Shown: in pieces, positions 7,929 through 63,100 of the stretch | Position numbering within the stretch: position 1 is the first letter of the stretch | How the letters are laid out: every line of letters begins with the position of its first letter | Assembly (NCBI GenBank): GCA_907165135.1 | Contig: OU015568.1 | Location: 5,766,001-5,830,000 of the forward strand | Reading direction: 5' to 3' | DNA from: Oikopleura dioica | Lineage: Eukaryota > Animalia > Chordata | Length of the DNA: 64,000 bases | Notes under the pieces: model-generated | The model's database searches: none | Told to the model about the DNA's origin: nothing | What the model saw: the letters and a program-made list of their open reading frames with translations, nothing else | Position numbers and translations under genes: made by a program

Positions 7929-7944
7929 GACACTACTGTTTTTC

Positions 7945-9162
7945 TTATGGCAAGTAGGAAAAAACAGTTGCTGATTTAATTACTTCTGTAAAATTCGATC
8001 CATTTTTAAAGGAAAAAAATCTCCCGAAAACAGCTTCAGCCATTTATCTGGACATAGATTCGGCTTGAGTGTCGGTTGAGTTAATTTGGGCGAAAAGAGA
8101 TTACTGTCTTGAAAATGGACCCGCTCCCTTTGGCAGACACGGCCGTCTTGACAGGTTGCATGTTGCGCCACATTTCCGCATCTGTGTCCGTTTTAATCAT
8201 CGTTTCCTTCATGTAGTGGAACATTGCCGTGTCCATTGGACCAGGCGCCCAGTTTAGGCAGCGAATTGAGGGTTCTTCTAAGGCGATGACTTTTTCAACG
8301 GGCTATTTTTCATCACCACTTTATCAATAAGCCAATTTTATACAGCGTATACTGAGCTCGGCAACCTGTGTAGAAAACCTGAGTCAGGTTCTGAAGAGAT
8401 CAAATGAAAAGCCGCGTAGCGGCTTTTAAGAAAAGAAGCCGCATAGCGGCTTCGCTAAATCAACATTACAGTCTCTTTTGATCTACTGGCGTAGCCGCTT
8501 TGCGGCTTTTTTGAGAAAGCCGCAACGTAGCTTTTCATTGGAGCTCTCTAGAACCTAATTGAGTTTTTCTACAAAATTTGCCGAGGCAAGAAAATGATAC
8601 CGTTTCCTTCAAGAAGACAATTTCTAGCTCTCCTGGAAGCAGAATAAAGTGAACATTTTGGCACATTGACTTTTGACAAGAGAGTCGTTATGTTCACGAT
8701 ATGAAGTTTGCTCTCAGAAAAGGTATTCTTGAAAGCGGTCGCGAGAGGAATGAATTGAGCGACATTCGATGTCCAGAAATTACTCAGCTCCTCTAAAATT
8801 GACCTAGAAAAAGTTATTTATTCTCAAATCAAACCTAAAGAGTGGCCTGTTTCCAAAAGTGGCTTTTCGATATCACCGCAAGTGCCTGCATTTGAAATTA
8901 AAAATGCACTTCGATACGACTTTCTTGTTGTTTTGATAAGTTCCATCCAATTCAGGGGCTCGCCAAGGTCGCCCTTCAAAATCTTCACTTCGCATCTTTT
9001 CTTTTCTTCTTTCTCTAGCCAGGGAATCGTTCCGTTTCTACTGTGAAGAAGCAGCAATGAATCCTTATCAAGACGGGAAAGAAACTCTCTAGCAATAGCT
9101 TCGCCATAGCCCCGATTTGCTCCTGTTATTAAAACGGCTGAGTTTTGACCAAAAATGACCAT
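7945..9162 (-). CDS. SPR: Sepiapterin reductase-like short-chain dehydrogenase/reductase
   Basis: VLITGANRGYGEAIA Rossmann motif, LISNAGTCGDI, VNITT, YSASR (YxxxK-like), ALEEPSIRCLNWAPGPMDTAM. Last exon uncertain. Confidence 0.75.
8354..8587. mobile_element. Family A MITE in SPR intron
   Basis: GAGCTCGGCAACCTGTGTAGAAAACCTGAGTCAGG...TTTGCCGAGGC with AAGCCGC hairpins. Confidence 0.85.
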
Positions 9163-9531
9163 TTTGTATTTTTTCGAAAACACACCCTTGGAAGAAGAAA
9201 AAGCAAAAAGACGAAAAAACAAATCAATAAACAACAGCTCGTTAAATTGGGCTCGATCATATCGCGATCATTTTTTTATTAATTGAAGATATTTCATAAA
9301 AAGAAAAAATTGGGCATCTTGGCGGGAAAAAGAAGTTTTCTTCAATTGTCGACCGGGTATTTGGCGTGTTTTTTCAAAGCAGCATCCATCGCCACTGAAA
9401 ATTTTTTGAATTGTTGTCAAAAAATTAAAAACTTTTGCTTCTTGAAAAACTTGAAAAATAATTTTCAAAAGTCGAATTTCGCACCATAAAAAGTGATCGA
9501 ATTTTCGGAATAGGGATTTTTCAATTTGTTT

Positions 9532-12500
9532 TCAAGCCGATAAATAAGCTCTATCTTTATAATCATTTTTAGATTTCTTCCTAAAACTTAAAAACTTGAA
9601 GCACAGCAAACCTTTGAGCATCGTCGGAAAATTCGGGTTCCCAAGCCCAGTGACAGGATCCCAGCCTTTCTGAGCATAAAATCCTCGATCGTAGTACTCC
9701 GACAAATCGCAGCCAGCGTTGTACCCTGAGTAAGCCCTGTTAGTAGCTATCTTTTCTTTGATAGGGCTCGGCAACCTGTGTTTAAAACCTGAGTCAGCTT
9801 CTGAATAGCTCCAATAAAAAGCTGCGTAGCGGCTTTTTTTTTAAACGAAGCCGCAAAGCTTCTTCGCAAGTTTTTTATGGCGAAGCCGCTTCGCGGCTAC
9901 GTTTTTAAAAAAGCCGCTACGCGGCTTTTCATTTGAGCTATTTTGAACCTGACTCAGATTTTCAAGACTGATTGTTGAGCACTTCTCTTAGATAAAACCT
10001 TGGGTAACGTCGGTAATCGCGTCAGGATTCTTGTAAAGCAGCGGGTTGACAAACCCAAGCGGCGGGAGATTCGATCGGAGTCGGTAGTCGTTGATGTGCG
10101 CTAGAATTCCAGCGACGACGGGGCAGGAAGCGGAGGTGCCCAGAACGCCAGGGACGGGAACACGGTTGTTGACTACCCAGTAGTGGTTGGAAACAGCGGC
10201 GATGTCGGGATAGCCTCGGCCCGTGGGGCGGTAGTAGTCATCTGATTCACTTTTTGACTCGCTTTCGCGCTTTTCTACCTACCTGGTGGAAGTTTTTCGG
10301 AAGTTCCAAGAAAGCTCGCGACAAGTTCTTTTTGATATTCTGGCATTTCGAAAACATCAGAAAAGCCGCCGCCAGAAATGTCGTATCCTTCTTCTTCGCC
10401 AATATCGAAGGGATGAATAAATGCTGTTCCACCTTTTTCCAGTTCAAAAATAACCCGAATTTCAACGCGAAGAAACAGTTAAATTTGAACTTTTCCTACA
10501 GTAGTGACGTACGGCGAGGTAGATGGCCACTGCGGCTCGAAGCGTTTATTTTCCTGGCATCCGGCGCCGTCGTCTCCAGAAGCAAAGAGCAGCGTCAGGC
10601 CACGAGCACCTGCCTTCATAAATTCCACGTTGATTCGTTTCATGTAATCTGGATCGACAGAATTTTCTTTGTCCGAGTAACTGGCGGAATTGACCAGTGG
10701 CGGGTTTTCTTCGTTAGACAGGTCTTTTTCAAGGGTTAAAAGGAAATAGGAAAAAAATTTTTTCTAGAGCAAATTTGTTTATTTTCAAAAATTGGTTCTA
10801 AAAAAATGATTTTATGGGTTTTTTAGAGATTCAAGACCGTGTGAATTGGTTTTACTAAAAAATTTATAAATTATTAAAAAAACAAAAAAAATAACTTTTT
10901 TATTAAAATCAAACAAAGCTTATTTTTCGATCATAAATGCACACCTTCATTTGCTATTCTTTCTTTCGGCTCGAAAAGCTGTTACTGAGGTTGAAAAAAC
11001 ACTCGTTTTTAGAATTTTCGATTTGCTAAATTTAGCAGAATGATTTCTTTCTTCTTATGCTCTGATGAAAGAAAATATAAATTTGACGCTATTTTGATTT
11101 TAACTTCACTAGTAAACATGTTTAAAAGGACGATCTCTCTATATACAGCGAAAAAAGCATGAAGTATTCAAAGTCAATTTTGTTTATGGAGAAATATTTC
11201 TCTAGAACATTTTTTTTAATTATCTCTAGAAAATTTTGTCCTGAGATAAAAGTGTCAAAAATCGAGAAAAGATTATTTTTAGCTACAATAACAGTATTAA
11301 ATAAACTCAAACTAGCTTTATTATTAGTTCTAACATCATAAAAACAGAAGGACGAAGAAATTTTTTCGGTGAGTTCAATAAACCAAAATAAAAAAAAATG
11401 ATGTTTTCTTCATTTTCCATCAGTGGACGTAAAATAAAAGGAAACGGGGAATGAAATTCTTTATCTGATAGAATAAAGCATGAGAATTCTCGTTTGAGTT
11501 TAATAAAATTGCTTTTTTAAATATTTTTTAATAATATTCGAATTTCAAATTTCATATTTTAGGCCATTTTTGTCTAGTCGACTTATTATCGAGAATCAAA
11601 ATTCTAGAACAAACAAATTCGCTCTAGAAAAAATCGAATTCTCTCAAAAATTTTAACCCGTGCCAATAAGCCACTGCAAAAACGGCTCCTGCTGCTCGTG
11701 TCTTCCCGCAGTGTACCAAAACCAAGTGGTGATGTTGTTCCCTGTCGACATGATGTACTGCGTATCCAAAGAAGCTTCGATTCCAGACAGGCCTCCAGGA
11801 ACGTCGCCGACTACTTTGTCGATTTCTTGACGGTGCTCGTAGCCTTTTCCGTAAAGTCGCCAGAAAAGGTCCAAATCGCCTTGGTGGTAGTATTGCTCGA
11901 GAAATTGAGGAGTGCATTGGCTGAAAAAAAATGATAATTTTTAAGTTTTCGTTCAAATTTTCGGATTTGAGTCGAAATTTTCAAGAAAAAACTCGATTAT
12001 TTGGACATTTTCTGGCTTTCTCAACTTTTCAACCAATAAGAAGCGGGTAAAAAGCCCGCCAGCCAATCAAAAATCGGCATTTTTCTAACCTGTTGTCTGG
12101 ATGGCGCCCTGTTTCGGAAGAAATATTGTATCTGGCTCGAATGACTTCTGGGTAGTTTCCAATGTGTCGGACGTTTTCTTTGATAGTTTTTCCGAAATCT
12201 TCTCTGTCGATTGACAACTTCTGGTGCACTGATGGAAGTTTGGAAACAGCGCCACCAATGTAGTCAATCATCGCCGCCGCTGACTGCGGAATCTTCAGAT
12301 ACGATGTTGTTCTGATATATTTTCTAGTGCTTCCAGGCTTCCGAAAGACGTGGAATTTTTGAATGTCAAAAAGTCGCATCGCATCTCGGACGGAAAACTC
12401 GCACGTGACCCAATCCATGTTCGAGTTGACGGTGCATTTTGAAGCGCTTTGCTGGGAAAGATACACTTTTTCTTCATCTTCGACGAAATTTTCGCCAGAA

Positions 12501-13220
12501 AGTCGGGCGAGGAAAAGCTCGACGAAATGCTTATCTCGTCCGACAAGTTTACTGAAACACGATTTGAAAGAAGAAAGGAGAAGAGGCTTTTTTACCTGAT
12601 TTGAGAGTTCTTGAGAAAATTGCCGTATTGGGAGCTGTCAGGGTCGGAAACTTGCCAGAATACTCGCTCGAGGATTTCCACGTTTTTCTGAAATGAATTG
12701 ATCAAAAGAAGATTTTCGAGTCGAAAAAGTACGAAGATGAAGTCCAAAGTTGACGATAAACTTCCTGATTTTTTGCTCGAAATAACCTTCAAAAATTTAA
12801 TCGACAATCTTGGGCAGAGTTTTTCGACAAGAAAATTTCGACAAATTTTGCGTGGGCCGCTACTCGACTGCTGATTGGCCGTTGAGCCGAATCCGGGTTT
12901 CTGATTGGTTGAAAATTTACACGCAAAATAAGTCGAAATTTTCACCTCTCAGTTTTTCACCTACTTTTTCAAAAAAAAAATTGTCTGGCAGACAAAATCT
13001 TCACTCCCTCATTTTTCCCGATTTTCGACGGTACCTGTTTCAATCCAAAGATAAAAACGGCCGTTTCGTCTAACGGAGCTGTCCCCAAATTATCCCAAAG
13101 CTTGGTGTTTTCATTAAAATGCTGCTTGAAATGCGACTTCCAAGTCGCTCTCTCCTCAAATGCCAATTTCTCTGCGCTAGAATTCAGCGCCAGCAGCCCT
13201 AGAGCCGCCAAAAACCTCAT
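9532..13220 (-). CDS. TPP1: Tripeptidyl-peptidase 1 (sedolisin family S53)
   Basis: Signal peptide MRFLAALGLLALN, prodomain VSDPDSSQYGNFL, EASLDTQY, LFASGDDG, YVTTVGGT, GRGYPDIAA, GTSASCP (catalytic Ser), GWDPVTGLG. Terminal exon uncertain. Confidence 0.93.
9764..9982. mobile_element. Family A MITE in TPP1 intron
   Basis: GGGCTCGGCAACCTGTG...TTGTTGAGCAC with hairpins. Confidence 0.85.
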
Positions 13221-14230
13221 TTTTGAAGGAAGAAAGATCGAGTTTTGACGAAAAAAAAACGAAGAAATTTGCTTTTGCGCGGAAAGATGCAATCATCAGC
13301 AGTTTTGAGCAGCGCGGGACGCTGAAATCAGGAAAACAACGACCGTCTCGTGCGCGCGAACCTACGCCCAGCTTCAAAATTCAAAATTGAACTTCTAGTG
13401 ACCTTCCTTTTCATTTTGAAAAACCTGAAAAAATCGAAGATCAAGGAAATTTTTTTCTAGAATCAACCGAAATTTTAGGTTTGTTATTATTTCTAAATTT
13501 TAAAATATCGGCAAAAAACTTGAAATATATTTAATGAAAATGTAATATAATTTTTTGATTAAATTCAAAATAAGCTTTTTATTATTTGTTCTAAAAATGC
13601 ATGGTGTCTTTTCGATTTTCTTGTGATATTGTTTGACAAAGTTCTCGATTCAAGATTTGAGACTAAACTCCTCTTCAGTCACCAAACTTTGGTGAACCCA
13701 TGAAGATTCTTTTTTCTAACTATGTTGTTATCATAAAGCAAGTTGTTATTGAGCCATTTTGATTTCAAGACTTTTATTTTTATTCACAAAAATGCGAATT
13801 ATATGAAAAAACTTGAGAAAATATCCATTTTAACCAATAGATATATCATCGTTCTATATATCGTTTTAGAAGTTCTAGAACATGTTTGTTTATTTTCTCC
13901 CAAAAGCCCTTTTATAGGATAAAATTAAAAAAACTCCATATATTCTACGATAATTTTGCTAAATTTAATCTTTTTTTCAACATAAACAAAAAGATTAAAC
14001 TCAAATTAACTTCGTTGTTGCTCAATTTCTAATAAGAGCTTCACAAAAACAAATCTATCTAGCTGAGTTACGAAAACCGAAACTTTCAAAATGAGTTTTT
14101 TCATTTAAAAATTTTGTTCTAGAAAATTCCATGATTGAATAGTTTTAGGATTTTTTATTTATTTTTATTACAGAATGAAGGGATAGAGAAAAGGAGAATC
14201 AATTAGAATTAAAAACAAGCAGAAAAAAAA

Positions 14231-23701: not shown

Positions 23702-26700
23702 TTACGACCGAAGCCGCACTAAATCTAGGTATGTTTTGGGTTTGAGACTGAGTGAGTAAGCAGTAGGAAGCAGATACCAAGTTTTTTCTTCCATGTTACC
23801 GAAATTGTTGTTCACCAGATTTACTCGAATATTTGCATCTTCATAAAACAATCCAAAGCTTTGGAGCTCGTCGTCAGAGGCAAAGTATGGATTATTCAAA
23901 GGGATTCGAATGACTAAAGAGCATTCGTTTTTATAGATATTGACAGACTTACGAGGAGGTTCATTTGATGAATGATCAGTATTTTGTAGAACGTATTCAT
24001 TGTTGTCTACTCTGTCGACAGTCATTTGATGGTATGCGACGACACCGTTTTGCAGATAAGCGCCAGTAACAGTAAGAGGACGAGTGAAAGCGAATTTTTC
24101 GTTCAAAGTAACTTTTAATATGTTGAACGAAGGAGAATACATTACTAAACTTGCCTCTTTCATAGTGACAGTCTGATGGAGGGGGTTTTTTGTCAAAATA
24201 TTTCCCAAGTCGTCGGATAATTTCCCATCCACTTTCCATAAGATACGTTTTCTGACAGAAATCTCAAATATAAATACGTATTGAGCTAGCTGAGCTGAGC
24301 AAAGCTGATTCATTTCTCAAAGTCATCACCTCTGCTCACTCAGTTTCCTAAGTTTTCGATTCCCTTCCTTACACATACGATCAAGGAGAACTTCTATTTC
24401 ATTCAGCTGGAAATCCTGTTCTTTTTTGTTGGGGTTCAAGTTCAGCCCAGCCGAACTCCGAGGATAAACAATCATCGTCAAAGTTGCAAGAATCGATTCT
24501 AACGAGTGCGAAGTCTCCAGATCCTTGAAGCCGAGATCGGTTCTCATCGCGTATCGAAGAAGTATTGTAACTGAGATTGGAACACAGAGCTGACTCGATT
24601 TTTGGTCGAGGATATTCTTTGTGAAATTTTGCATATCTTGCTCGAAGAACTTTGTCATCCGGTTCTTCAAGCTTGACATGTGGCACGATTTCGTCATGTT
24701 CGCATCAAGGCAAAATTGAGTTGAAGAATTTTCAAGGGAAATTATGTTTGTGATCTTTTCGATAAAATTTTCTTGGGTTATATTGATATCCTCGTAAAAG
24801 TGTTTTGTTTCATCATTCTTCATATATTTTTTAATCGAGGATGCATCGCAATCCTTAAAAACATTTATTTTTTCTAATTTATCTCAAATGATTTAACCTC
24901 AATAATTCGGTCGATTTCCTTTCGTTCATTATCATCAAGAGGCTTGTAAAGGAGAGTCCATGATGTTTTCCAGTCACAAAAAAGGAATAAAAGAAGATTA
25001 TGATTCTCATATCCCTGTCCACGCCCAATTTGATGTTGAACTGCAAATCCAGGTGAGCCACCGGCTAAAAATCTATCATTTGTTTAATTTTGGGTTTTAC
25101 CAAGAGACTGAGAAGCTGTGTACTTTGAGCCTTTCCTCGTATATCCCATTTTTCTATAGCCTTTTGACCAAGATTTATCAATAACCAGACCATAATCAAT
25201 TATTTTTGGAATTCCATCGGCAAGGAGAATGTTTTCCAGTTTCCGGTCGTAATGGTAAATTCCACAATTTTTCCATAAATAATTAAATCCCTTCAAAACG
25301 CCTTTTGCAATTTCCTTTCGTTGTTTAAGATCAAGTACGTCTCCTTTTAAGACTCTTCGCAAATTGTCTTCAGCAAATTCCATTATTGTAACCCAACCAA
25401 GGCAGTCTTCTTGCTTTGAATCTTGCTTGTAAAAAAACTCGATGTTCGCAAAATGACGAATCACATTTTCGTGATATGGAATAATCCTATCTGCTCCATA
25501 TAGAGAGTTACCAGTCAAATGGTTTTTTGCCACCGTGTGAAGGAAATCTTCAGAAAAAAATGCTTACAAAGTGCTAGCACTAATGACATTTACCTTCTGA
25601 AAGACGAATTTTATATGTAACTGCATCTTCTTCGAACTTGTCCGTGAAAAGAAAAGGATCGAATGCTTGAACGCGAACTGCAAAATCTTTTTCGCCAAAT
25701 TTTTCTTTAAGAATAATCGCCTCTCCACCATAAGAAATAACTTTTCATCGCTCAACTCCCATTCTCCAGTTTCTTCCTTGATATCCGAGCGCTCAATAAG
25801 TTGACCATAAAGCATGTTTTTCTCAAGTAGCATTCGTTGAAAACTGGTTATTTTGAAATTTTCTTTGATATTTTTCTTCTTAGAATCGTTGTTTATATGA
25901 ATTTCACCACAAGCGTTCTTCGTTAATGATTCTTTGATGAATTTGACAAACCGCCAGCGAAAAGAAATTCCAGAATTTTTGAAGTTGAATCTCTCCATTG
26001 ATGCGATTAATCGACATTTTGGAGTTCGGGATGTTGTCCTTTTCAATTTCGGTAGAAAGTCATTCAGCCAATGTACAAGTTGATCTTTTCCTAGGTCACT
26101 TGGATGTTGCGATATCTTTTCAGGTGATAGAGAACAAATTAGTAAGAGGGCTAAAAGAATTGCAATAGAGGCATATAAAAGAGATTCAAAAAGTTGAAAT
26201 CCTACGCGATCCATAAGAATGAATATTGAAAAAAAGGAAGAAAGGAGTATAAAAGATATAATAAACAAAAAAGTTGGCACAAATCAAAATCAGTAAGTCT
26301 GGAGCTAGGACGTGACAGCGCAGGACCAAATAATAAAGTATCATACATTGAAGAACGGAATAAGAAAGTATCATACATTGAAGAACGGAATAAGAAAGTA
26401 TCATACATTCAAGGACCGAGTAAGAAAGTATCATACATTGAAGCGTCAAATAAGAAAGTATCATACATTTAAGGACCGAGTCTTTTTTGGAGCCAATAAG
26501 ATTGCTGTATTTGGCCTACCGGCCAATAAGAAACCCAGCCTTTTTGGATTGTTCCTTGTATGACCGATCCAATTTTGCATCGTCCTTGGATTGGATTTGC
26601 ACTATAGCTCCATCCTTCAATGTATGATACTTTCTAATTCGGTGCTTGAATGTATGATACTTTCTTGTTCGGTCCTTCAATGTATGATACTTTATTATTT

Positions 26701-32183: not shown

Positions 32184-32910
32184 TCAAAAAGAAAAGCCGG
32201 GAAAAAGTACCTTTGGCGCGGCGGAAGGCTTTCTTGAAGATTTCCTCGCGTTTTTCTGAATTAGCTCTTTTACTTTCTCTTTCTTGGCTCCGACGAATCT
32301 GTCAACGACCTTGTTTTTCGAGTAAAAATGAAAAGTAGGGACGGCTTTGACTTTCATTTTCTTCGCGTAACCGGCGAGGATGTCGGTATCGACTCGGATG
32401 ACGAGGGTATTTGGGTGCTCGTGCTCGATTTGATCGATCCATTTTTCAGATTCTAGGGGTTTTATGCGAGGAAAAAGGGGATTGATAGGTTTTACCTGTG
32501 CATTGCTTGCACCACTTGGCAAAATATTCGACGATTGCAAGGGAACTCTCTTAAATTTTTGAAAGTTTAAGGGGAGGTCATTGGAAAACTCGATTTTTGA
32601 GAGCATTTATCATGGTGACACCCTTATTTTTTCGACTCAAAATGGAGGTTTGACATTAACAGTCTTTCGAGTCAAAAGTTTTGACAAAATAAAATATGGG
32701 TGTCTCTCTGTTAAATGAAAAAGACTGGGCTCAGCAACCTGTGTAGAAAACCTGAGTCAGGTTCTAAAGAGGTAAATGAAGCTCTTCAGAACCTAACTCA
32801 GGTTTTCTACACAGGTTACCGAGCCAAGGCAATAGAATCGGCTGTCAATCATCACCTGCAGTAGATAACTCATCGTATAATTCCTGCCTTGTGTTCACCA
32901 AAACAGGCAT
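32184..32910 (-). CDS. Thioredoxin-like protein (WCKQC active site)
   Basis: Exons give MPVLVNTRQELYDELSTA/ESSLAIVEYFAKWCKQCT/ESEKW...VIRVDTD...VKAVPTFHFY...DRFVGA. 3' end uncertain. Confidence 0.85.
32727..32825. mobile_element. Short family A MITE in thioredoxin intron
   Basis: GGGCTCAGCAACCTGTGTAGAAAACCTGAGT...ACTCAGGTTTTCTACACAGGTTACCGAGCC. Confidence 0.85.
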
Positions 32911-37360: not shown

Positions 37361-40300
37361 ATGAACGATGCTTACTGTATTCTACCATCGTGGGCGCTTG
37401 AAACCGGCCACTTTGATTCCCGCCTCGCCACCGCCGCCAAAATCCAGCAAAAACTGCCTTCCAACGAAGTCTCCACCGCGAAATACACGAAATGGAATTT
37501 CTTTCCGAAAAACTTGTTTCTTCAAATGCACCGATTTGCGAACGTCTATTTCGTTTTCATCGTAATTATCAATTTTGTTCCGGCGACGCAAACGCTAGAT
37601 CCGACTTTGGCGCTTTTTCCGCCGGCTTTCGTGATCGGAGTCAGTTTGATAAAAGGTAAGCATGGAGGTTCTTATCGTTTTTGATGATCGTCCTTTTCAG
37701 ATTTGTACGAGAACATCCGATTAACTCGAGCAGACGACTCGGTCAATTGCACAAGAGCGGAGCGCATCAACAAAGACAAAAGAGCGGAAGAAGTCAGCTG
37801 GAAAGGCGATCCGGGCTCTATTCGAACTTAGCAGAGCTTCAGAATACATTAATCCTACGATTATGCACCCTTAGCGAATTCTCAAGACATCATGAATCCT
37901 GATTTTCCCTCTTGCTTCCTACAAAAGATAACATAAAAGTGACACCCTTATTTCGGTGGATGACAGAATTCTGAAGCCGCTTTCGTATTCGATCTTATAA
38001 TAGAAAGACCGCGCTTCGCGCGGCTTTAATATCGGTTTGACGAAGCCGCGAGCGGCTTCCGGATTCTGTCATTCACCGAAATAAGGGTGTCACTCTTATG
38101 TTAACTTTGGTAGGAAAGGAAGAGGAAAGAGCCTTATCCTTCAGGTCTTTTGGTCGATTCATTCTCCAGAAATGATGCTAACAATGATCGATCGGAACCA
38201 ATTTCGTTTTACCGTTTTTCGTAAATACGGCGTAATAAAAGAAATCCAATAAATCGAGCGCCAGCTTTTTTAAAGAACCCAAACAAAGACCTCCGCGCTG
38301 GCGACGTCATCCGTCTCTATGTCAACGACATCGTCCCCGCCGACATCGTGCTTCTCTACACCACAGACGAAAGGAGCATTTGCTACGTCGACACGATGGA
38401 TTTGGACGGCGAAACCAACCTGAAACAGAAAGAAATCGTCGTGAAAAAGGACTCGTCGCCGTTTGAATTGACGGATTTTCTCGACTTCGGGTTTTTTATT
38501 CGCGCTGAACCGCCAAATGTCGACTTGAATAACTTTCATGGGAGCTTTGAAAGCTACTCGCATCAAGGAACGGGGTTTACTAATTGTCAAGTTTAATGAG
38601 CGGATGAGTGCTTGACTCCTCTCCGACTTGTGACGTTTTACGATAATTGAGTATTGCGATTGCTCTCAGGCAGACAAAACCATGATTAATTTCTTTGATA
38701 AGCTATTCGAAGATCCCCTGAAAAGACCAGTCAAGCGTAATCTACCAGAAAAACATCCTCCTTCGCGGCAGTGCCATCCGAAACACGGATTACATCTTCG
38801 GAATGGTCATCTACCCCGGTCGTTTGAGCAAAGCGGTGATGAACAACGGCGAAAAGCGGAAGAAAGTATCGACTTTTGAAAAAGTAATCAACGGCGACAT
38901 TGGCTACGGAATTCTGTTTCTCTTGCTCATGTGCTCAATCACAGCGTCGATGATCATCCACAACGACGAAGAAGTCCATTGGTACATTCCGGAAGAAAGC
39001 AAAAGAGCGGATTTTATTCAATGGGTTTTTGCGTTCTTGACGATGCTGATTATTCTTCAGAACATCATTCCGATCTCGTTGTATGTTTCCGTCGAATTCA
39101 TAAAACTCGCGCAAGTCTGGATGATCCAACAAGATATCGAGCTGTATTCAGAAGTTTCTGATTCTAGCGTTACTTGCCGAACACTGAACATTGCCGAAGA
39201 ATTGGGGAACATCCAGCATGTTTTCTGCGACAAAACCGGAACGCTCACTGAGAATTCAATGGTCTTCAGGGAAATGTCAGTAGAAGGGATCAAATACCTC
39301 CACCCGGAGCAGGCAAAGATGATCAAAACTGTGACGAAACAAACAAGCGGCCAGAACACGGAGCAGTCGAAAAGCAGTCTTCAGCGAATGCTCTCTGGTA
39401 ATTCGGGAAAAAGCGGAGCGATTCCTCTCAATGGAGGTTTTTCTCGATCGCGACCTGGATCAGCCAGAGCTAGCTTCAGAAGACCAAGGGGAAATATCCA
39501 GCGCTCTCGGCCGAAGAGTCATCATCGTCGAGTTATGAGCGACACGAACTCGATCCGCGATCAAATCATCTCCGATCGGATGAAACAAGTCGACGACGGC
39601 GACGACGACGAGCTCCTTTTCGACGAGAACTTCGTTTTGGAATCAACTGTAAAGCCAGATTTCGAACTGAAAGAACGGCTGACCGAAGAACTGGCGATCC
39701 ATGGAAAACGACGGGGAATGTATTCGTCGAAAACGCTGGATATGTTCCTCAGCCTTGCGATTTGCAATACAGTCGTCATTTCTGTCGAGCAGCAGCAAAA
39801 AGAAGTGAAGCCTTCGAAGAGCAAGCTTTCAAAGCTCTCCTTGCTCACTCCAAGCAGCATCAGAGACAGCGCAAAACGACTCTTCACTCTTGGTCGAGAC
39901 AGCAAATCGGGCGTTGGAAATCCATCTTTTCATATGAACGAAGAAAATGGCGAAAACGGCGGCAGAAACTCGCAGAAAACGGAACTTCCAGCGATTAACG
40001 AGTCGATGGAGCCTTCAGAGACGATTTCTTCCGGCTCTCTTCCCAAAGTTGCTACTCCTGTTAGATTCAAGCCGAATCGACCGACTTCACTTTTGATGCT
40101 TCCGGAAACTCAGGGAAACGTAGCCAAGCCGTCATTTGACAATCTCGCCGTTACACCTCAACTTGCGACCGGCGCAACGACACCAGGAGGAGTGGGAGAA
40201 AATGGGGCGTCTAATGAGTTGCGGCCGGAAGATGCGCTTTACGAAGCAGAGTCGCCGGATGAAGCGGCTTTGGTTAATTGTGCAAAGGTAAGCTGCTAAC

Positions 40301-50605: not shown

Positions 50606-52446
50606 ATGCCCTGTAATTTTGACAAAGAGAAATGGAAGAAAAACGCGAGTTTGGCGATTTATGGACTGACTTTTTTGTTTATTGGAGTTGATTATGCTAT
50701 TCACTTGCCAGGGTTGTACAGTTATTTTATTTCGATTGGGACTGATGGTGCTTATTTTTCGGAAAGTTTGAAAGATAAGAGATTATAGGATAAATTAAAA
50801 AAATTCTTTTATTATTTTTGATAAATTAATTATATAAATAATTTATTTTTGATTATTGATGACTAATTATTTTAAAAAATATTAAAAAAAAACTTATTTT
50901 TATAAATAAAAATGAAAAAAAATCTGAGAAAAACTTTTAAAAGTACGCAGTAGCCATGTTCGCTTCTGGATCCCTAATCGGTGGCCCTTTATTTGGCCTG
51001 TTTTTCGATCGCTGGAACATTCCAAAATTGATCACCGCTTCCGGAGTGCTTTGTATATTTCTCGGGAGCTTCTTGTTTGTTTTACAAAACGAAGTCGCGA
51101 TTCTTTTCGGTCGATTTTTGGCTGGAATCGGCGCTGGAATCGAGGGAGGCATTGTTGGGCTGATTTCGAAGTCGAGCTCGCCTGCGTCGCGGTCGAAGAA
51201 AATTAGTATACTTTATGGCTTGAAACAAATCGGAGTCATCCTCGGCCCCTTGATGATCTCAATCTTCCTCGGCGGGGTGGAAGAAAAGTGCTTCAAGCAG
51301 AATTCTTACGATGATGACTTGTGCATTGTTGGAATCAACAACCACAACTCGACGGGCTACTTTCAATTGGGCTTCTCTGGAATCTTGCTTTTACTCGTCC
51401 TTGTTTTCGCGCAAAATCACGAAGTCAAGCAAATCGAGCCAGAGGCGCAGAAAACAGCAGTTTCTGAAATCAAGCTGCGGCAAATCAAGCCGTTCAAAAT
51501 CATCAACGAAATTTCGATTGTTTGTTGTTTCTCGACCATGGCAATGTACAGCTTACAGTCGTCGACGGAAGCGATTTTACCGCAGTTTACAAAGTATTTT
51601 CTCGGTTTCGGCGCGGTGGAGAATTCCTATGTTTATGCAATTGCTGGTGGGAGCGCGATTTTCGGCTTTTTAGGAAACATTTTTTAAATTTTCCCTCATT
51701 GAAATCAAGGAAGACTCTCTCTCTCTCTCATTTTGAAAATGTTCTTAGCGCTTACTATCATCGTCCGATGCCTCAAATCTCACGAAATTCTGCTCACGGG
51801 CTTGTCGTTTGAGCTCTTTATTTCAGTCATTTTGATGATTGCTCTCGTTTTTGTGGATTTTCAAGCTCCCTGGTTTATTCCCGTCGCTCTTCCTGGCATC
51901 GTCATCGTAAAATTCCATGTCCCCAGGCGTTTCCCTTAACCCGTTTTCTTTCAGTACGCGCTTTTTCTATCATTCATCATCTCCAGCGCTTCAACGATTC
52001 TCTCTAGATCTTCGCCGCCCGAACGACAAAGTCTCATGCAGGTACTCCCGAACACCCCTTAAATCATCATTTCTGTCATTCAGGGAATCAGAATCGCGCT
52101 CGAAAAAGTGTCGATTATCTTGACGAATCTCTTCAGCGGGCAAATTTACAACATCACCACCTCTTTCGCGTCAATTTTTATTCTAACAACGACCTTATTG
52201 ACTCTTGCCGTCGGCTTTGTCGTCACTAGTTGGCGAGTTTTGGATGTTGACGCTGTCCAATTTCTCCACCAGGTATTTCTCGAGAAAATTCGAGTTTTTG
52301 AACGATTTCAGATGCGAAAAATGGAGGAAAGCGAGGTCTTTGAAAACTCAGCGTTTGAAGAAATCTCGACAAAACCTGCTTCTGTTCCTCAAGGAAGTAG
52401 ATTAAGACGGCAAACAACGACAGAAGTCCGTGAAGAGTACCTCTAG
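50606..52446 (+). CDS. MFS transporter, MFSD8/CLN7-like
   Basis: Multiple TM helices, PLFGLFFDRW (MFS motif A-like), GRFLAGIGAG, GVILGP. Confidence 0.85.
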
Positions 52447-53542: not shown

Positions 53543-56500
53543 ATGATCCAACCTTGGATGACTTGGAAACAAACATGCGCGGAGACTCAGAAAAGCATGC
53601 AGACAGCCTATGAGCACAACAAAGCATATGGCTTCGACGAGCGTTTGAAATCAAGGAAGACTTCTTTTCACCTCTTTTTTCAGGTTTCTGCCAAGACCAA
53701 GACCCAATCGCGATCGCCTATCAAGCGAAAAAGATTCACGAAGAATGCGTCCTGGTAATTTTTCGTCAAATTTATTTCCGACAGTTTTTTTTTCAGTACA
53801 ATCCTTGTGGTGGTGGAGCAGCGTCAATGAAGATTTCGGTCAATACTGAAAATGGCACGAATGGCACGAATGGCACGAATGGCACGAAATCACTGAAAAT
53901 GGCACGAAAACAGAGACACATTTTTTTGCGAATTAACCTTGAGGAATATTATGAATTAAACTGGAAAATTAACGGATTGATTTGAAACGATAGTTATTAA
54001 ACAACTTGAAAAGTTCATTAATCATGATCAAAATCAAAAAAAAAAAAATTTGAAACTTTTTTAAATTGACCGCAAATTCAGGCCCAAAGAGATTATTTTT
54101 TGAGTGAAATTCCTCAATTTTGCCATTGTCATTGATAAAAAATTGAAATAATAGTGATTTTAGCATAAATGATCAATTTTTCATTGAATACTCAAGTAAT
54201 AAACGCCCGCTCCGCGGGTTTAATGGGAGGAAACTCAAGGGTTGAAAAACAGGATGGTTGGACATTTCCCTTACACAAGCTACCACACATCCCTTACGGG
54301 CTACTAGACAATACAAGTGGCGCAACGGAGCACTCAGCGCCCCAGACAAAGATTCCTTTCGAGCAACTATCTAATGAATGCCTCTCATGCAAGATAAACT
54401 CAGAACAAAGGATTTTTGATTTTGATTTTATTTTTTTATCAATGTAGGTTACAGTATCAGTTTTATTCACAGAATATAAAGAAAAGATAAGGCAGTTTTA
54501 CAAGTTAGGCACAATAGGAGGAAAAATAATGTTGTGAAGAGGCAGTGAAAGCTGTTTAGTCAGAAGAATAATATTTTTTTTAACAAAGTCATTAGGAGCC
54601 ATGAATATAAATTTATTAATTTCGAGAATCCTCTCATACTTATCAATGACTTCCTTTCGGCGAAAATTGAAATCATCATTTTCAACAGAAAGGTTATTGT
54701 CATATTTGAAATCAAAGATGTTCTCAGCTGATTTGGCAAGACTATTAGCACCACAATTATAGAGTTGTTTCAACTTTCCATTAATGCTCTCACAACAATT
54801 ATTTGTAATATGAAATTCTCTAGAATTGAGGTGATAATAATAATTCCAACCATCCATCGATTCTTTTTTCAAATAATTGTCTTTAAAATATTTCATAAAT
54901 TTCCTGAATCCAGGCCTCAATTTCTTTGAAAAAGAATCGACATGAGTCGAGAGCGCCGACATAAAGTCAGAGTGAAAATTTGGGTCGAGAAAGGAAAGAC
55001 CTTTAAAAAGAAGATAAAACTCACAAACTTCAGAATTCGACGTAGGTGTCTCATTTGTGAATTCCATCAACTTTTTCTTGTATGATTTTACCTCGTGAAA
55101 AAAACACTGAGTTACGTGAGCATTGTACATTTCTTCCGCTGCTTTTTTGAGTCCCGGTTCAAAATCGAATACAAAATAACTTATTTTCAATTGTCTACCA
55201 AATCGAATTTGGAATCGATCATTCAAAATGGTAAATAATTGTTTGTAAGTCGAAGTAAGCCGATTTTTCATGAAACAGAAAATAACAGGAAATGCTCGCA
55301 TTTTCTCAGGATTTTTTTGACTAGGTAAAAGGATACATAAAATAAATAACTGAAGAAAATCTAATCCTCTCACCGGTTCCCAAGTTCCGTCTCCGAAAAC
55401 TCCCTGATGCTCATTTATTTGAAATCTTTCTTTCGATGAGTCATCTATGAGTTCCAATTCACTTTCCAGAAAAAACGCGGTCATATTTTCGTTCTCGAAT
55501 TGAAAAAAGGGTACAGATACATCTTTTTCCAAAACGGGATCGTAAACAAGCATCGTTTTTACTGAATCGGGAATTTCATCTTTAGAAGTGTGCGCTCCCG
55601 GGGCTCTCTGAATGGCTTTGTATGCGGATTCTCGAATTTTTCTCTTATCAAAATCAATTTCATTAGCTAAGCGACGACTCGAAATGGCTTTGTTAATATT
55701 AGATGTTTTGAAAATTGAAACAGTTTGATTTTGATGGGAAATTGCGGAATTTTGTTTTGTCAGTTGTCGAAATTTTTGATCGATAATTTTCATAGGAGGA
55801 GGTCCATCTGTACAAGTATGAGTATTTTCGCAAGAAATAACTTCATAGAAAGAAATATTGAAACGATCAGAAGATTGAAAATTGAAATCATTTTTCTTTC
55901 GTTCACACTCCTTTTCGACTCCTGTTTTCGGGTGTTTTCGCATGTACTTGTACTTAGCTGTAGTAATCATCGCTGGACATTTGAGCTTTGCAGAAGCCTT
56001 GCACTTCGAATTCGAGCAAGTCAAAGTGATTGTGGTTGCAGAGGTGGTGTTTCGATGGACGAGTTTGTATCTCTTTTTTCTGTCGCCGTGCTCGAACCAC
56101 CATGCGACTCCATCTTTTCTGTCGGATGTTGTGATCTCGATGAGAAATCCTTTTTCGTCGCTTCCTCTCTTTGCGTCAGTGTCAAGTTTTTTTATTTCTT
56201 TCAAAAAATCCATTTTTTGATTTTTTAGGAATGAGCAAAATGAAGAAAAAGTTCCCCTTATATGAGGAAATTTTGGTGAATCGGCATTCTATTTTTAGAA
56301 CTGAATCGTCCGGTATCGAACTAGAAAGACGGCAAGAAAAGGTGACAACTCTCACGCTCCATTCGAAAGAGCTATCTATTCGATTGAACTCGCTTCTCCA
56401 TCGCCAATTCATTTGAAAGTTCGCTGGGACTTTCGTGATGTCGTCCATGATATCAGCAGAAAATTATCAAATCTAATAGCCCCTTACCTCGGGGCTTCGC

Positions 56501-57573: not shown

Positions 57574-57833
57574 GTTAACTATTTTTCTCCTTCGCTTTGG
57601 CAACGCATGATTAAAAATGAGAATTAACGAAATTAATTATTAATAATGCTGCTTTGAAATTAAATTTCAAAGCTGAAGAGGATTATTGAAGTCTATTAAC
57701 ACTTTACTCTTCCGTAAAATGACCTTTGTTGTCGTTAATAATTAGCAACACTCCTGAAGAAAGCGCTCATTCGAGTGTTCTTCAACTGTGAAAATTATCC
57801 TTTTTAGTTATTTTTTCATAAATATTCTTCAGA

Positions 57834-58167: not shown

Positions 58168-58468
58168 AAATCATCTTATCCAAAAAATCAACTCTGATTC
58201 ATTTTTGATCTCCTTGATTTTAATAAAGATTTTGGGAAATTTTACTTACATTTTTTTGCATTTTATAAGTAAAAAACTCAGAATATCCTGCGAAAACGCA
58301 GATATTGGTGAAAATCAAGCAAAGAAACGATGTTTTTATAGAGAATATATCAAAAAGGTTATTCATGTACGCATATTTAACGGTTGAGCACCTCAACTAA
58401 TTATAACCTCGATTCTACAAGAATAAAAGAACGATGTTTCCAAAAGTTACACAAAATTGAAAACAGAG

Positions 58469-60010: not shown

Positions 60011-60104
60011 CTACTGATCCAAGATCTTTGAATAAGTGTGTTTTTATTAAAATATACAAAAGAAAGAAAGAATAAATATACAGCTAAAAATCGAGAATGT
60101 CATT

Positions 60105-63100
60105 TCACTCCTCGGGGCAAGAAGAATTTATTGGGACAATAATTCCATTCGCGCAGCAGTTTTCGTTGTTGATTTCGAATGTTGATGACTTGGATAAAAA
60201 CAGATTAGCTTGATTCGATCGGTTCATTAAGCCGCTAATTCAAAGTTGATATAATAAACATACCCCACAACAGAAGGCAAAAGGATCGCTGAGATCGTAC
60301 AAATGTCCGCCACAACAACCTTGAATCTGAAAAATGAGAATGAAAATGAGCTCCTTATTGTTTGAAGAAATACCTCTGAATTGTATTTTTTGCTCCCACA
60401 GCAAGAATCTGTCTTCACCAGCTCTACGAATTTGTCTTCGCTGGATCCCATCAGCAACTGCCCGGTGAAAACGGAGGCGAGAAAATCGGGAGAATTAGGA
60501 GCCATGATCTGCTCGTCGTGGAGGGCGAAGACGGAAACGGTGTATTCATCGTAGGGATCGTATTTTTGCCCGGAAAGAGCAAACTAAAAATTTTCATGAA
60601 AAATTTTTTTGAAAGTTTTTTCACCTCTTTTGTATTTTGATTGACGTCCACAATCCATGGTTTTTGATCAATAACGCTGGCAAACGGCGCGAAGACCAAT
60701 CTGTATCCATTTTCCGGCTTCTTTGCTCGCGGATGCTCCCACGTGACCTCCAACTTTGGCTCGCCAAAGATCCCTCTTTTGACTCGCAGCGCTTCTGGAC
60801 GGAGATAGGTGGGTACTTGGCAGTTTTGTTGATGCGGGAAGTGGCCTTTTGCATCCGCAACGGCGACGCTGATGGTTTCTGCTGGGCCCTCGACGTTGTC
60901 CACGACGAATCGGATGCTGATCGTGTAGACCACATTTTGATACAAGCCTTGAAAAAATATAATAATAACAGGCCTCAGCAACCTTTGTAGAATACGGTAT
61001 TCTAAATACCAAAGTCTGATTTTAAGGAGCTAAAATGAAAAGCCGCATAGCGGCATTTTCTAAAAATAAGCCGCGGAGCGGCTTCGATTTCAAAAAAGCC
61101 GCTTAGCGGATTCAAATTTAAGCTCGTCAAAACCTGACTCAGGTCTTCTAGGTAAGATTCCGAACTTAAGAAATAAACTGGGGGTAAAAGTTACCTTCAA
61201 GAGTCGCTTGAGTATCCCAGGCATTGGGAAAGAAAGTCGGCGATTTTGTGTAACCTTGAGGAGTATTCGGCGAGTACTCGATTTTGACTCAAAAAGCTTT
61301 TTTCAAGTGAATATTTTCAACAATCATTTCTTGTTCCGAAGCGTTTTCAATCAATGTCTACCAGACAAACGAACGTCATTTTTCATAAAAACATGAAAAA
61401 AAGAGGGGGCGCCTTAATTTTTCATCACGTTTTTTTTCATAACGAAAAAAGGGCTGGCTCCCGTTTCGTTGTGTGATGAAAATAGTCGGCGTCAGGATAG
61501 GAAGGGTTGTTGACGATAAAAATTCAAAAGGGTTGACGGTGAAAATAGTGATAGAATCACGTTATGTGTTTCAAAATATTGTTGGTGATTAGACACGGTT
61601 TCTCTAATTTTAGACTTATGCTAAAAATCCATTTAACAAGAAACCGCAAGTGCTGTTTTATCAGCCCAAGAGAGGTGATAATGATATCATAATAAATTTA
61701 CATAAAATGTCGATTTTTTAGAAAGATTGAACGCTTCTAAGGTCGAAAACCTGTGTAGAAAACCCGAGTCAGGGTCTGAAAGAGCTCAAATGAAAAGCCC
61801 CGCAGCGGCTTTTTTTAAAAAAGAAGCCGCGAATCGGATCCGCAAATCTGACAATTGCGGCTTCTTTTAAAAAAAGCCGCTGCGGGGCTTTTCCTTTCAG
61901 CTCTTTCAGACCCTGACTCAGGATTTCTGCACAGGTTTTTGACTCGAAATTTTCGGGGAGGTGTCTGGAACCGACAAAAAAATTTCGACAAATTTTGCGT
62001 GGAAATTGTCAACCAATCAGAAGCCTGGATCGGCAAATCATCAGTCGAGTAGCCGCCCACGCAAAATTTGTCGAATATTTTTTTTTGTCGGTTCGAGACA
62101 CCATCCCAAATTTTCGAGCCGAAATCAATATTTTTTGTCTTTAAAAATTTGAAAAAGCTTTCCTGAATCATAGTCAATATTCGGATTTTCCCACCCAACA
62201 ACGACATTCGCTCTTTCCAAATCCGAAATGCTCTCTTCAACAATTTTCAAATTCGCCGGCTTTGGAGGCAACGACGTGACTTTGAAATTCAGCGGCGGGG
62301 ACCAGGCTTCGTTGGTCGGATTTTCGCAATCGTCGCAGGCAACTGATTGGATTTTGTAATCCATTGAGACGCCTTTGCCGATGGTGAGTTGAATGCCTGT
62401 TTCGGTGGTGAAGTAACGCTCATTTTTGTCTCGAGCATTGGTGATGACGTATTGGTCTGGGTCGCCTTGGTCGCCGACGTAGCTTTTGAAGGGTTCAAAT
62501 ATTTTGCCGATCAAACAGGGCGACATGAGGTATCGGCAACCTTTAAAAATACCTGCGTCAGGGCTTAAAAATATTGAATAAAAAGACGCTTAGCGGCTTT
62601 TTTAAAAACGAAGCCGCGAAGCGGCTTCGCAAAATTATTTCTCTGATTAATTTCGAAATTCAGGCGAAGCCGCTTCGCGGCTTCGTTTTCAAAAAAGCCG
62701 CTACGCGGCTTTTTACAAATGAAACCCTGACTCAGGTTTGCTACACCGGTGTCCGATACCGGGTTTTCCCAGCAAAGAATCTTTGAACCCTGGCTTGGAG
62801 GTTGCCATTCGATCCAAACTGTCGAGGAAAATCTTCCAACTGTAACGACCTTTTCGACTGCTCTAGGACTAGTCCACGCGGTGAAAATGCTCTCTTCGCC
62901 TTCATCTGTTTTCGAAACCGGCGTTACGGAAATTTCGTATTTTGTGTGAGGCTTGAGCTTGTCCACGGCCATCGATGGTCGGTCGTTTTTTATTTTGAGC
63001 TTGGAGCGACCGGCTTTTCTGCCAGTATCGCTGTCGGTGATCGTGACTTTCCAGTCGGAAACGGAATCGGATCCGATCGTGTCCCAGTTGAAAAAGAGAC

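What the first reader, a model, noticed from the sequence alone, without database searches (positions are those of the whole stretch)
8290..62162. Recurrent non-GT introns, many paired with an A-rich AAAAG acceptor
Seen: GA-AG introns at TPP1 10433-10495 (forced by YVTTV/GGT), MFS 51674-51748 and 50762-50943 (lengths fit the paralogous MFS), FN3 gene 61288-62162 and SPR 8290-8606; GC-AG introns at TPP1 10724-11663, flippase 37806-38288 (W-K-D-L-R-A-G-D) and kinase gene 24112-24154. Six of these eight end in AAAG (GGAAAAAG, TTAAAAG, TGAAAAAG twice, AACAAAG, TTAAAAG), whereas most GT introns here end TTTCAG/TTTTAG. Established: Oikopleura has unusually many GA-AG introns. Inference: non-GT donors and purine-rich acceptors may form a coupled intron class with its own recognition rule. 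The coupling is not absolute (two GA introns lack it; a likely GT intron of the Hv1-like gene has it), and I cannot tell whether it has been described.
Basis: partly seen in the sequence, partly recalled or inferred. Interest (0 to 1): 0.75.

Follow-up and report, generated by a model that had tools for sequence, protein, structure and literature searches.

The report
Clamped non-GT introns with A-rich tails
In this Oikopleura-type genome, introns that begin with GA or GC instead of GT usually have two ends that base-pair into a short helix, followed by an unpaired A-rich tail before the final AG. Related lineages keep this architecture, and it probably helps the spliceosome use weak splice sites.

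Summary
Seven junctions have some independent support: sister-lineage RNA reads (SPR), gap-free homolog continuity (both TPP1 introns), ortholog conservation (both MFS introns), a paralog family (the 'kinase' case) and, on the acceptor side only, an ATP8B1 alignment (flippase). FN3 rests on frame logic alone.

The coupling is real locally. Six of the eight end in AAAG, against 1 of 48 strong-donor GT introns (Fisher p = 6e-6). An acceptor-blind parser repeats the result in the adjacent 200 kb: 5/10 against 7/95, p = 0.0015 (conservatively 3/8, p = 0.03).

The coupling is not absolute. Four paralogous GC introns have TATTTTCAG acceptors, and one GA intron changed AAAG to CTTAG in the window's lineage. 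All intact U1 genes are canonical.

The main new result is that non-GT introns have complementary ends (-8.3 against -4.4 kcal/mol for mismatched pairs, p = 0.0004), and GT introns do not (p = 0.56). The two ends co-evolve across lineages, and the three short GA introns tested are single-copy.

Two earlier notes of this scan reported the same clamp elsewhere in this genome. I found no description in the papers I could search. It resembles Fritillaria and euglenid structured introns, so I class it as a new variant of a known kind.

The parts
10433..10495 (-). TPP1_a: GA-AG intron, 63 nt, phase 1. Helix AGTTCAAATTTAAC / GTTATTTTTGAACT, tail GAAAAAG.
   Evidence: Boundaries. It has an in-frame stop. 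P0008 reads PYVTGVGGTEF across the junction. My parser called it independently. Own-end duplex -8.4 to -11.8 kcal/mol (16/26-nt and 18/28-nt end windows), better than every mismatched partner. Whole-intron fold z = -2.9. Single copy in the genome.
10724..11663 (-). TPP1_b: GC-AG intron, 940 nt, phase 1. Helix GGGTTAAAA / TTTTAACCC, tail AAAAG.
   Evidence: Boundaries. P0007, P0008 and P0009 show the same W-to-NPPLV spacing with no gap. Own-end duplex -12.1 kcal/mol, better than all mismatched partners. A further 43-nt inverted repeat lies about 35 nt inside both ends.
8290..8606 (-). SPR: GA-AG intron, 317 nt, phase 1. Helix AACGG / CCGTT plus an outer arm, tail AAAAAG. A palindromic MITE copy sits inside at about 8351-8591.
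   Evidence: Eight sister-lineage RNA reads end at 8607, and their tails are homologous to the exon after 8290; the +6 GT is not used there. adh_short profile hit on the upstream exon. MITE copy. Duplex -6.7 to -8.4 kcal/mol (16/26-nt and 18/28-nt end windows).
51674..51748 (+). MFS_a: GA-AG intron, 75 nt, phase 1. Helix AACATTTT..AAAT / ATTT..AAAATGTT, tail TTAG (AAAG or GAAAG in diverged lineages).
   Evidence: The GA donor is conserved in window, L003, L001, L004 and L002 (A1). Own-lineage pairing beats cross-lineage pairing, with a C:G to G:C swap. Single copy.
50762..50943 (+). MFS_b: GA-AG intron, 182 nt, phase 0. Helix GAAAGTTT / AAACTTTT, tail AAAG.
   Evidence: The GA donor is conserved in the three lineages that cover it, and AAAAG is invariant in five, while interiors cannot be aligned and lengths are 182, 178 and 59 nt (A2). 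Own-lineage pairing beats cross-lineage pairing. No repeat family.
61288..62162 (-). FN3-gene GA-AG intron, 875 nt, phase 1. Helix GAAAGCTTTTTCAA / TTGAAAAAAGCTTTT, tail GAG. It holds several MITE copies.
   Evidence: Boundaries and frames. The second parser called it independently. Own-end duplex -11.9 kcal/mol, better than all mismatched partners. MITEs. No homology or RNA test of the junction.
37806..38288 (+). Flippase (P4-ATPase) GC-AG intron, 483 nt, phase 1. Weak helix, tail AACAAAG.
   Evidence: The downstream exon aligns to ATP8B1 residues 195-278 from its second residue. The upstream exon is too short to score. The W-K-D-L-R-A-G-D spacing fits the family motif, recalled from memory. 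End pairing is not significant.
24112..24154 (-). 'Kinase'-neighbour GC-AG intron, 43 nt, phase 1. Donor GAG|GCAAGT, acceptor TTAAAAG. The exon belongs to a domain family of at least 124 copies, not to a kinase domain.
   Evidence: Family homology begins at residue 1-2 of the downstream exon. Four paralogs share the frame SGW(E/Q)I and the donor AG|GCAATTT, but they have TATTTTCAG acceptors. End pairing is weak.
9726..9998 (-). Control: ordinary GT-AG intron of TPP1 (273 nt) holding a MITE copy at about 9763-9983.
   Evidence: A sister-lineage read tail at 9727 continues at 10001 with third-codon-position differences. Sequence read. The cut is ambiguous by 2 nt, and GT..AG is the canonical reading.

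Best explanation
The GA-AG and GC-AG introns here form a structural subclass of ordinary (U2-type) introns.

Their first nucleotides are usually purine-rich (CAG|GAAAG...). These pair with a pyrimidine-rich stretch near the 3' end to form a terminal helix. The helix starts at intron position +1 to +4 in most of them and leaves 3-7 unpaired nucleotides before the 3' AG.

Shown here: the helix, its geometry, its absence from GT introns, its co-evolution across lineages, conservation of the GA donor and the A-run, and a canonical U1.

Inferred:
- The helix brings the two splice sites together and so makes up for a 5' site mismatched to U1 at +2 and for the lack of a T-tract next to the AG.
- The tail is A-rich because A cannot pair with the purine-rich 5' strand or with the CAG exon end, so the AG stays exposed.
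- The class may have begun as hairpin-forming insertions, as proposed for Fritillaria. The ones studied here are old, single-copy and kept by selection.
For: - End pairing in the 8 claimed introns: own -8.3 against mismatched -4.4 kcal/mol, permutation p = 0.0004, and 6 of 8 beat every mismatched partner. In 28 strong GT introns: -3.8 against -3.8, p = 0.56.
- Geometry: helix start at +1 to +4 in 16 of 19 introns and orthologs, tail 3-7 nt in 17 of 19, mostly AAAG or AAAAG.
- Whole-intron fold z-scores: -1.10 (non-GT) against 0.01 (GT), Mann-Whitney p = 0.017; MFE structures pair the two ends in nearly all of the short non-GT introns.
- Cross-lineage test on MFS_a and MFS_b: own -9.5 and -8.6 against cross -5.7 and -4.8; the true assignment is the best of 6 permutations in both, joint chance 1/36.
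- GA donor conserved wherever covered, and AAAAG invariant at MFS_b, with interiors that cannot be aligned.
- AAAG acceptors: 6/8 against 1/48 strong GT (p = 6e-6). Replication in the extension: 5/10 against 7/95 (p = 0.0015), conservatively 3/8 (p = 0.03).
- Replication introns lie in a sulfatase and a cadherin, with abutting Pfam coordinates.
- The three short GA introns tested are single-copy.
- All intact U1 copies read ATACTTACCTG.
Against: - The sample is small: 264 kb, about a dozen non-GT introns and three lineages.
- Flippase and kinase show no significant end pairing.
- Pairing in the replication set alone is only a trend (p = 0.09).
- Whole-genome motif counts gave no enrichment over the built-in controls.
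- A helix that includes G+1 should compete with U1 binding, so it might hinder rather than help.
- The helix model does not by itself explain why the A-run is conserved as a sequence.
- No same-lineage RNA was available, so splicing of seven of the eight introns is inferred rather than observed.
- GT introns were defined by my own parser, not by transcripts.
Confidence: 0.55

Rival explanations
1. Relic of origin only. These introns began as insertions of hairpin-forming elements (MITE-like, with terminal inverted repeats and a target-site duplication). The complementary ends and the A-rich tail are leftovers with no role in splicing, and the coupling reflects how such introns are born.
For: Fritillaria non-canonical introns carry TIRs and TSDs and are attributed to MITEs (PMC11282704). 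MITEs are abundant here and sit in introns. An earlier scan note reports a MITE-made GA-AG intron nearby. Some helices start at +4 or +5 with GAAA outside, like a duplication flanking a TIR. MFS_a lost its AAAG in one lineage.
Against: The three short GA introns tested are single-copy. They are shared by lineages with only about 70% exon identity, yet the pairing persists through different letters. For TPP1_a, no register of TIR plus duplication gives back an in-frame exon (direct reading). The exon ends do not match the intron ends as a TSD would require.
Confidence: 0.2
2. A true second 3' splice code. The A-run itself is read by a dedicated protein, or by a second binding mode of U2AF, which acts specifically with GA/GC 5' sites. 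The helix is secondary.
For: AAAAG is invariant in five lineages at MFS_b while neighbouring intron sequence is free to vary. The motif YTTGAAAAAG recurs (SPR, TPP1_b and one GT intron). Duplicated U2AF subunits read non-canonical 3' ends in Fritillaria (PMC13326754).
Against: GC paralogs work with TATTTTCAG. MFS_a works with CTTAG. FN3 ends TTTTGAG. No factor was examined here. In Eurytemora, GA donors come without altered acceptors (PMC5714493).
Confidence: 0.12
3. Mis-drawn boundaries. The real introns use nearby GT donors or other acceptors, and the pattern comes from how the reader chose splice sites.
For: A GT lies 6 nt inside both the SPR and the TPP1_b introns. My first parser drew the flippase and kinase regions differently. 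FN3 and the flippase donor side have no independent support.
Against: Sister-lineage mRNA joins SPR exactly at the GA site. Homologs show no 2-residue insertion at TPP1_b. The GA donor is conserved in the orthologs, where no GT alternative is conserved. Paralogs confirm the kinase-case frame. An acceptor-blind parser reproduces the coupling.
Confidence: 0.05
4. Chance or local base composition. A-rich stretches make GA starts and AAAG ends co-occur without any biology.
For: Whole-genome motif-pair counts are no higher than the reversed-pattern controls. GAAA and AAAG are both common in Lys/Glu-rich coding sequence.
Against: The mismatched-partner control removes composition, and the pairing stays significant. 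The signals are conserved in orthologs. The introns are needed to keep conserved reading frames.
Confidence: 0.03

Closest known systems
Oikopleura dioica non-canonical G(A/C/G)-AG introns (11-12% of introns; Denoeud 2010 as cited in PMC8008620; Frey & Pucker 2020, PMC7072748)
   Same: Same organism type and same intron class: GA-AG outnumbers GC-AG, exon AG lies upstream, A sits at +3, and the introns are constitutive and needed for the reading frame.
   Different: The texts I could read describe the donor side only. Neither an A-rich 3' tail nor complementary ends is mentioned in words. Frey & Pucker show 3' logos only in a figure I could not see, and I could not read Denoeud 2010 or Henriet 2019.
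Fritillaria borealis non-canonical introns (Henriet 2019, as summarised in PMC11282704 and PMC13326754)
   Same: A larvacean relative. Its non-canonical introns carry terminal inverted repeats, are removed by the U2-type spliceosome, and U1 keeps its 5' end.
   Different: There the termini are AG-AC or AG-AT, the 3' site comes from a TAC duplication, the introns are recent and lineage-specific, and U2AF is duplicated. Here G...AG is kept, the introns are old, single-copy and shared by diverged lineages, and no duplication fits.
Euglenid non-conventional introns (PMC11282704, PMC3935182)
   Same: Pairing of positions near +4..+6 with -8..-6 brings the intron ends together. The helix geometry relative to the two ends is strikingly alike.
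   Different: Euglenid borders are variable and lack G...AG, and the removal mechanism is unknown. Here the borders remain spliceosomal.
Yeast intron 'zipper' stems and structure-dependent 3' site choice (PMC2536676, PMC3239191)
   Same: Intron secondary structure shortens effective distances and affects splice-site use.
   Different: The yeast stems join the 5' site region to the branch site, or the branch site to the 3' site, in long GT introns. They are not tied to non-GT donors and do not pair the very first intron bases.
Eurytemora affinis GA/GG donors (PMC5714493)
   Same: Abundant GA donors with an obligate exon AG, A at +3 and a canonical U1.
   Different: The author states that acceptors differ little from those of canonical introns, so the A-tail is not a general companion of GA donors.
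Introners / MITE-derived introns (reviewed in PMC11282704)
   Same: Inverted-repeat ends and non-canonical borders in some lineages.
   Different: Introners are multi-copy families with target-site duplications. The three short GA introns tested here are single-copy, and no duplication fits.

Membership tests
U2-type non-canonical G(A/C)-AG introns of O. dioica | Intron starts with G then A or C, and ends with AG | tested here: met
   All eight.
U2-type non-canonical G(A/C)-AG introns of O. dioica | Donor context otherwise fits U1 (exon AG at -2,-1; A at +3) | tested here: met
   Exon AG in 6 of 8 and A at +3 in 7 of 8. The replication introns read cag|GAAAG.
U2-type non-canonical G(A/C)-AG introns of O. 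dioica | Removed from mRNA at these exact boundaries | tested here: inconclusive
   Seen only for SPR, and in a sister lineage. Six others are supported at least partly by homology or conservation, and FN3 by frame logic alone. No same-lineage RNA run was listed.
U2-type non-canonical G(A/C)-AG introns of O. dioica | No compensating U1 variant (canonical U1 5' end) | tested here: met
   Four intact copies read ATACTTACCTG, and one further copy is interrupted.
MITE- or introner-derived introns | Member of a multi-copy sequence family | tested here: not met
   TPP1_a, MFS_a and MFS_b match only themselves in the 64-Mb genome. The MITE copies in SPR and FN3 are nested inserts, not the intron ends.
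MITE- or introner-derived introns | Terminal inverted repeats | tested here: met
   Complementary ends in 6 of 8.
MITE- or introner-derived introns | Target-site duplication such that element plus one copy equals the intron | tested here: not met
   Exon ends do not match intron ends beyond the AG consensus. For TPP1_a no register restores the frame (direct reading).
Euglenid-type non-conventional introns | Helix joining the two intron ends a few bases in from each border | tested here: met
   Helix from +1..+4 in most, tail 3-7 nt in most.
Euglenid-type non-conventional introns | Variable borders without G...AG | tested here: not met
   All have G at +1 and AG at the end.
U12-type (minor) introns | 5' consensus RTATCCTT and a TCCTTAAC branch site | tested here: not met
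   None of the eight 5' ends resembles it. Larvaceans are reported to have lost the minor spliceosome (PMC13326754).

The most novel reading that the evidence does not exclude
A chordate runs a second, structure-based splice code. A terminal helix plus a sequence-specific A-run tail defines a class of introns whose 5' site is mismatched to U1, and the A-run is read by a dedicated factor or by an alternative U2AF mode. This would be a working intermediate between ordinary spliceosomal introns and the helix-defined introns of euglenids.
Probability: 0.2. Interest if true: 0.85.

Novelty: new variant of a known kind. Interest (0 to 1): 0.62.

Why it matters
How a spliceosome with an unchanged U1 handles thousands of GA-AG introns in Oikopleura is an open question. 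A terminal helix that co-evolves across lineages, together with a conserved A-run tail, gives a concrete hypothesis that can be tested by mutation. It links this animal to the structured non-canonical introns of Fritillaria and euglenids, and it suggests how transposon-like insertions could settle into stable introns. On the practical side, gene finders could use end pairing to call non-GT introns, which current models of this genome often miss.

Tried and rejected
- RNA reads: the listed runs come from a lineage 5-10% diverged, so few reads laid. Their 'GA..AG joint' at 8642-8745 is only diverged coding sequence. That was the single read-laying run.
- Pfam on single short exons: too insensitive for most junctions.
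- Enumerating every XY..AG segment that bridges two open frames: all 16 dinucleotides score alike.
- Frame-compatibility excess per donor class: too noisy at dinucleotide level and too sparse at motif level.
- First self-trained parser: fragmentary models. The second, with a donor matrix, was used only with vetting. Its 726-nt GH47 call was dropped after Pfam showed a gap of about 70 profile positions.
- Whole-genome motif-pair counts: no enrichment over the reversed-pattern controls. A by-eye count of extended stems among the matches is qualitative only.
- SPR ortholog search: no candidates. The TPP1 exon B search gave homologs but no sister-lineage genomic contig.
- Atlas search on the 135-aa exon: uninformative.
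- U1 variant hypothesis: rejected.
- TSD model: rejected for lack of matching repeats.
- Phase-1 bias (7 of 8): not distinctive, because phase 1 is also the commonest among GT introns.
- Papers: I could not read Denoeud 2010, and Henriet 2019 did not turn up in my searches.
- Joined exon models were not sent to any search tool. Predicted coding sequences were joined only inside my scripts, to train codon statistics.
Full report
**What the window is.** It is G000:C1:5,766,001-5,830,000 of a 64.28-Mb assembly in 19 contigs. It is about 40% GC and gene-dense, and my intron calls have a median length of 49 nt. This fits Oikopleura dioica, for which 11-12% non-canonical introns and an excess of GA-AG over GC-AG are published (PMC8008620; PMC7072748). 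I did not confirm the organism's name or the strain by any tool.

**Observation.**
- All eight introns begin with GA or GC and end with AG at the stated places.
- Each joins two open frames, and seven of the eight are phase 1.
- Six of the eight end in AAAG.

**Are the junctions right?**
- SPR: the only RNA runs offered come from a lineage 5-10% diverged. Even so, eight reads stop exactly at 8607, and their unaligned tails encode V-I-A-S-E-D-A-S-L-R. The exon after 8290 encodes V-I-A-L-E-E-P-S-I-R, so the tails are homologous to it. That mRNA joins at the claimed site and not at the GT six bases further in.
- TPP1: three homologs, one from a transcript catalogue, read across both junctions without a gap. 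They have ...LHWIT-S-VNNDPDAALVHS... and ...QWPASNPYVTGVGGTEF..., against the window's ...LQWLI|D|LSNEENPPLVNS... and ...YVTTV|G|GTAF....
- MFS: I fetched four orthologous contigs at 93%, 77%, 73% and about 70% identity. At both introns the GA donor is conserved in every lineage that covers it. The interiors cannot be aligned, and lengths run from 59 to 182 nt.
- MFS acceptors: the MFS_b acceptor AAAAG is invariant in five lineages. The MFS_a acceptor is AAAG in the two diverged lineages that can be aligned there, and CTTAG in the window and its 93% relative.
- Flippase: the downstream exon aligns to ATP8B1 from its second residue. The donor side rests on the family's W-K motif, which I recall from memory.
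- 'Kinase': one open frame runs through the claimed intron, and my first parser read it that way. However, the downstream exon belongs to a family of at least 124 copies whose homology begins at residue 1-2.
- FN3 has only frame logic.

**Is the coupling more than chance?** I built a self-trained parser. It uses a 3-periodic Markov coding score, a donor matrix that ignores position +2, and no acceptor information. I ran it on 264 kb, made of the window plus the only 200 kb I could still fetch.
- Among 48 strong-donor short GT introns, positions -8..-3 are 54-69% T, and one ends in AAAG. In 13 non-GT introns, positions -4 and -3 are 85% A.
- Six of 8 against 1 of 48 gives p = 6e-6.
Dropping one unreliable call and one paralog gives 3 of 8 (p = 0.03).
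- Two of these new GA-AG introns lie in a sulfatase and one lies in a cadherin. Pfam coordinates abut across one sulfatase junction and the cadherin junction, and the second sulfatase junction falls at the end of the domain profile.

**Limits of the coupling.**
- The four GC paralogs end in TATTTTCAG.
- MFS_a kept GA while its tail changed.
- FN3 ends TTTTGAG.
- In Eurytemora, the other animal rich in GA donors, the acceptors are said not to differ much from canonical ones (PMC5714493).
- All four intact U1 genes read ATACTTACCTG, and a fifth copy is split by an insertion. No compensating U1 exists.

**What lies behind it.** The boundary sequences looked complementary, so I tested that.
- Duplex energy between an intron's own first 16 and last 26 bases averages -8.3 kcal/mol in the eight introns. 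For ends paired across different introns of the same class it averages -4.4, which controls for composition (permutation p = 0.0004). Six of the eight beat every mismatched partner.
- Twenty-eight strong GT introns show nothing: -3.8 against -3.8, p = 0.56.
- The helix starts at intron position +1 to +4 in 16 of 19 introns and orthologs. It leaves an unpaired tail of 3-7 bases in 17 of 19: AAAG, AAAAG, GAAAAAG, and TTAG in MFS_a.
- Whole-intron folds pair the two ends in nearly all of the short non-GT introns. Their z-scores are lower than for GT introns (-1.10 against 0.01, p = 0.017).

**Relic or selected?**
- The three short GA introns tested match nothing else in the genome. The MITE copies in SPR, FN3 and a GT intron of TPP1 are nested inserts.
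- In the MFS orthologs the helix persists with different letters. For MFS_a the window has AACATTTT/AAAATGTT, L001 has AAAGTTTCTC/GAGAATCTTT and L002 has GAAGAT/ATCTTT, including a C:G to G:C swap.
- Each lineage's 5' end pairs better with its own 3' end than with another lineage's. The true assignment is the best of six permutations for both introns, a joint chance of 1/36.
- This favours selection on the helix, though it rests on three lineages.

**Mechanism (inferred).** The donors fit U1 everywhere except +2 (CAG|GAAAG), and the T-tract does not abut the AG. A helix at the intron base would place the two splice sites side by side. An A-run cannot pair with the purine-rich 5' strand or with the CAG exon end, so the AG stays free. 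Two points remain open. Pairing of G+1 should compete with U1. The invariance of the A-run suggests that it is read as a sequence, which the helix alone does not explain.

**Comparison with what is known.** Fritillaria non-canonical introns have inverted-repeat ends and duplications and are ascribed to MITEs. Euglenid non-conventional introns pair +4..+6 with -8..-6 (PMC11282704). Yeast uses intron stems for distance control (PMC2536676 and PMC3239191, listed). The present class keeps G...AG, is old and single-copy, and carries an A-tail. In the papers I could search I found no text describing this for O. dioica. I could not read Denoeud 2010 or Henriet 2019, and Frey & Pucker show 3' logos only in a figure.

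**Earlier notes of this scan.** Two notes on other parts of this genome report the same clamp (s1-371336) and a 3' motif of GA-AG introns explained by a stem (s1-363070). I reached the result, before reading them. They are AI notes and not independent proof.

**Verdict.** The best reading is a helix-clamped subclass of non-GT introns (confidence 0.55), which I class as a new variant of a known kind. The evidence comes from 264 kb, and RNA support exists for one junction only, so the claim needs a genome-wide junction table.

Noticed in passing
window 2043-2361, 6720-6826, 7835-7895, 8356-8585, 9728-10000, 19172-19213, 32727-32825, 34905-35086, 45095-45283, 61028-61151, 61748-61937, 62533-62756: A palindromic repeat of about 200-240 nt (70-80-nt inverted arms, core rich in AAAGCCGC/GCGGCTTT) occurs at 14 places in the window. 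Copies sit inside the SPR and FN3 GA-AG introns and inside an ordinary GT-AG intron of TPP1, so it inserts into introns of either kind.
   Followed up: partly
L009/L010 = G000:C4:6603540-6604297 (-): One U1 snRNA gene copy is split by an insertion: its 5' part matches at 6604182-6604297 and its 3' end at 6603540. The four other copies, on C2 and C5, are intact.
   Followed up: no
window 23705-24109 (-); paralogs at C1:5886291-5886635, 5891442-5891795, 5930303-5930653, 5970390-5970737 and over 100 other places: The 135-aa exon next to the claimed 'kinase' intron is a domain exon with at least 124 copies in the genome and no Pfam match. The window copy and the four neighbouring paralogs examined have a GC-AG intron just upstream. 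It is probably not part of the kinase gene at 25087-25533.
   Followed up: partly
L018:3058-3124 (+) and L020:2250-2299 (-), i.e. C1:5903058-5903124 and C1:5922250-5922299: Two sulfatase paralogs 19 kb apart, on opposite strands, carry the same GA-AG intron with tail CTCTC(G/A)AAAG. In the second, the motif CTCTCAAAG is duplicated, giving two candidate acceptors 10 nt apart, and the upstream exon end has diverged.
   Followed up: partly
window 54498-56213 (-): A 571-aa open frame with a MULE transposase domain (E = 1.8e-5) lies next to the MFS genes.
   Followed up: no
window 7500-13400 against runs X1, X4-X6: RNA runs filed under the same species label are only 90-95% identical to the window in coding sequence, with differences mostly at third codon positions. 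They come from another cryptic lineage.
   Followed up: partly
L026:2693-2786 (+), i.e. C1:5982693-5982786: A cadherin-gene GA-AG intron sits exactly between two cadherin repeats. It has a helix ATGGTCA.TTTTT / AAAAA.TGACC and the tail AAAAAACAG, which is A-rich but ends in CAG. The AAAG definition therefore undercounts A-rich tails.
   Followed up: partly
window 103-105 kb of the extended sequence (C1:5869000-5871300): A repetitive Gly/Pro-rich gene makes the parser call many 30-40-nt 'introns' with GA, GG or GC starts. They look like artefacts of the repeats and were excluded.
   Followed up: no
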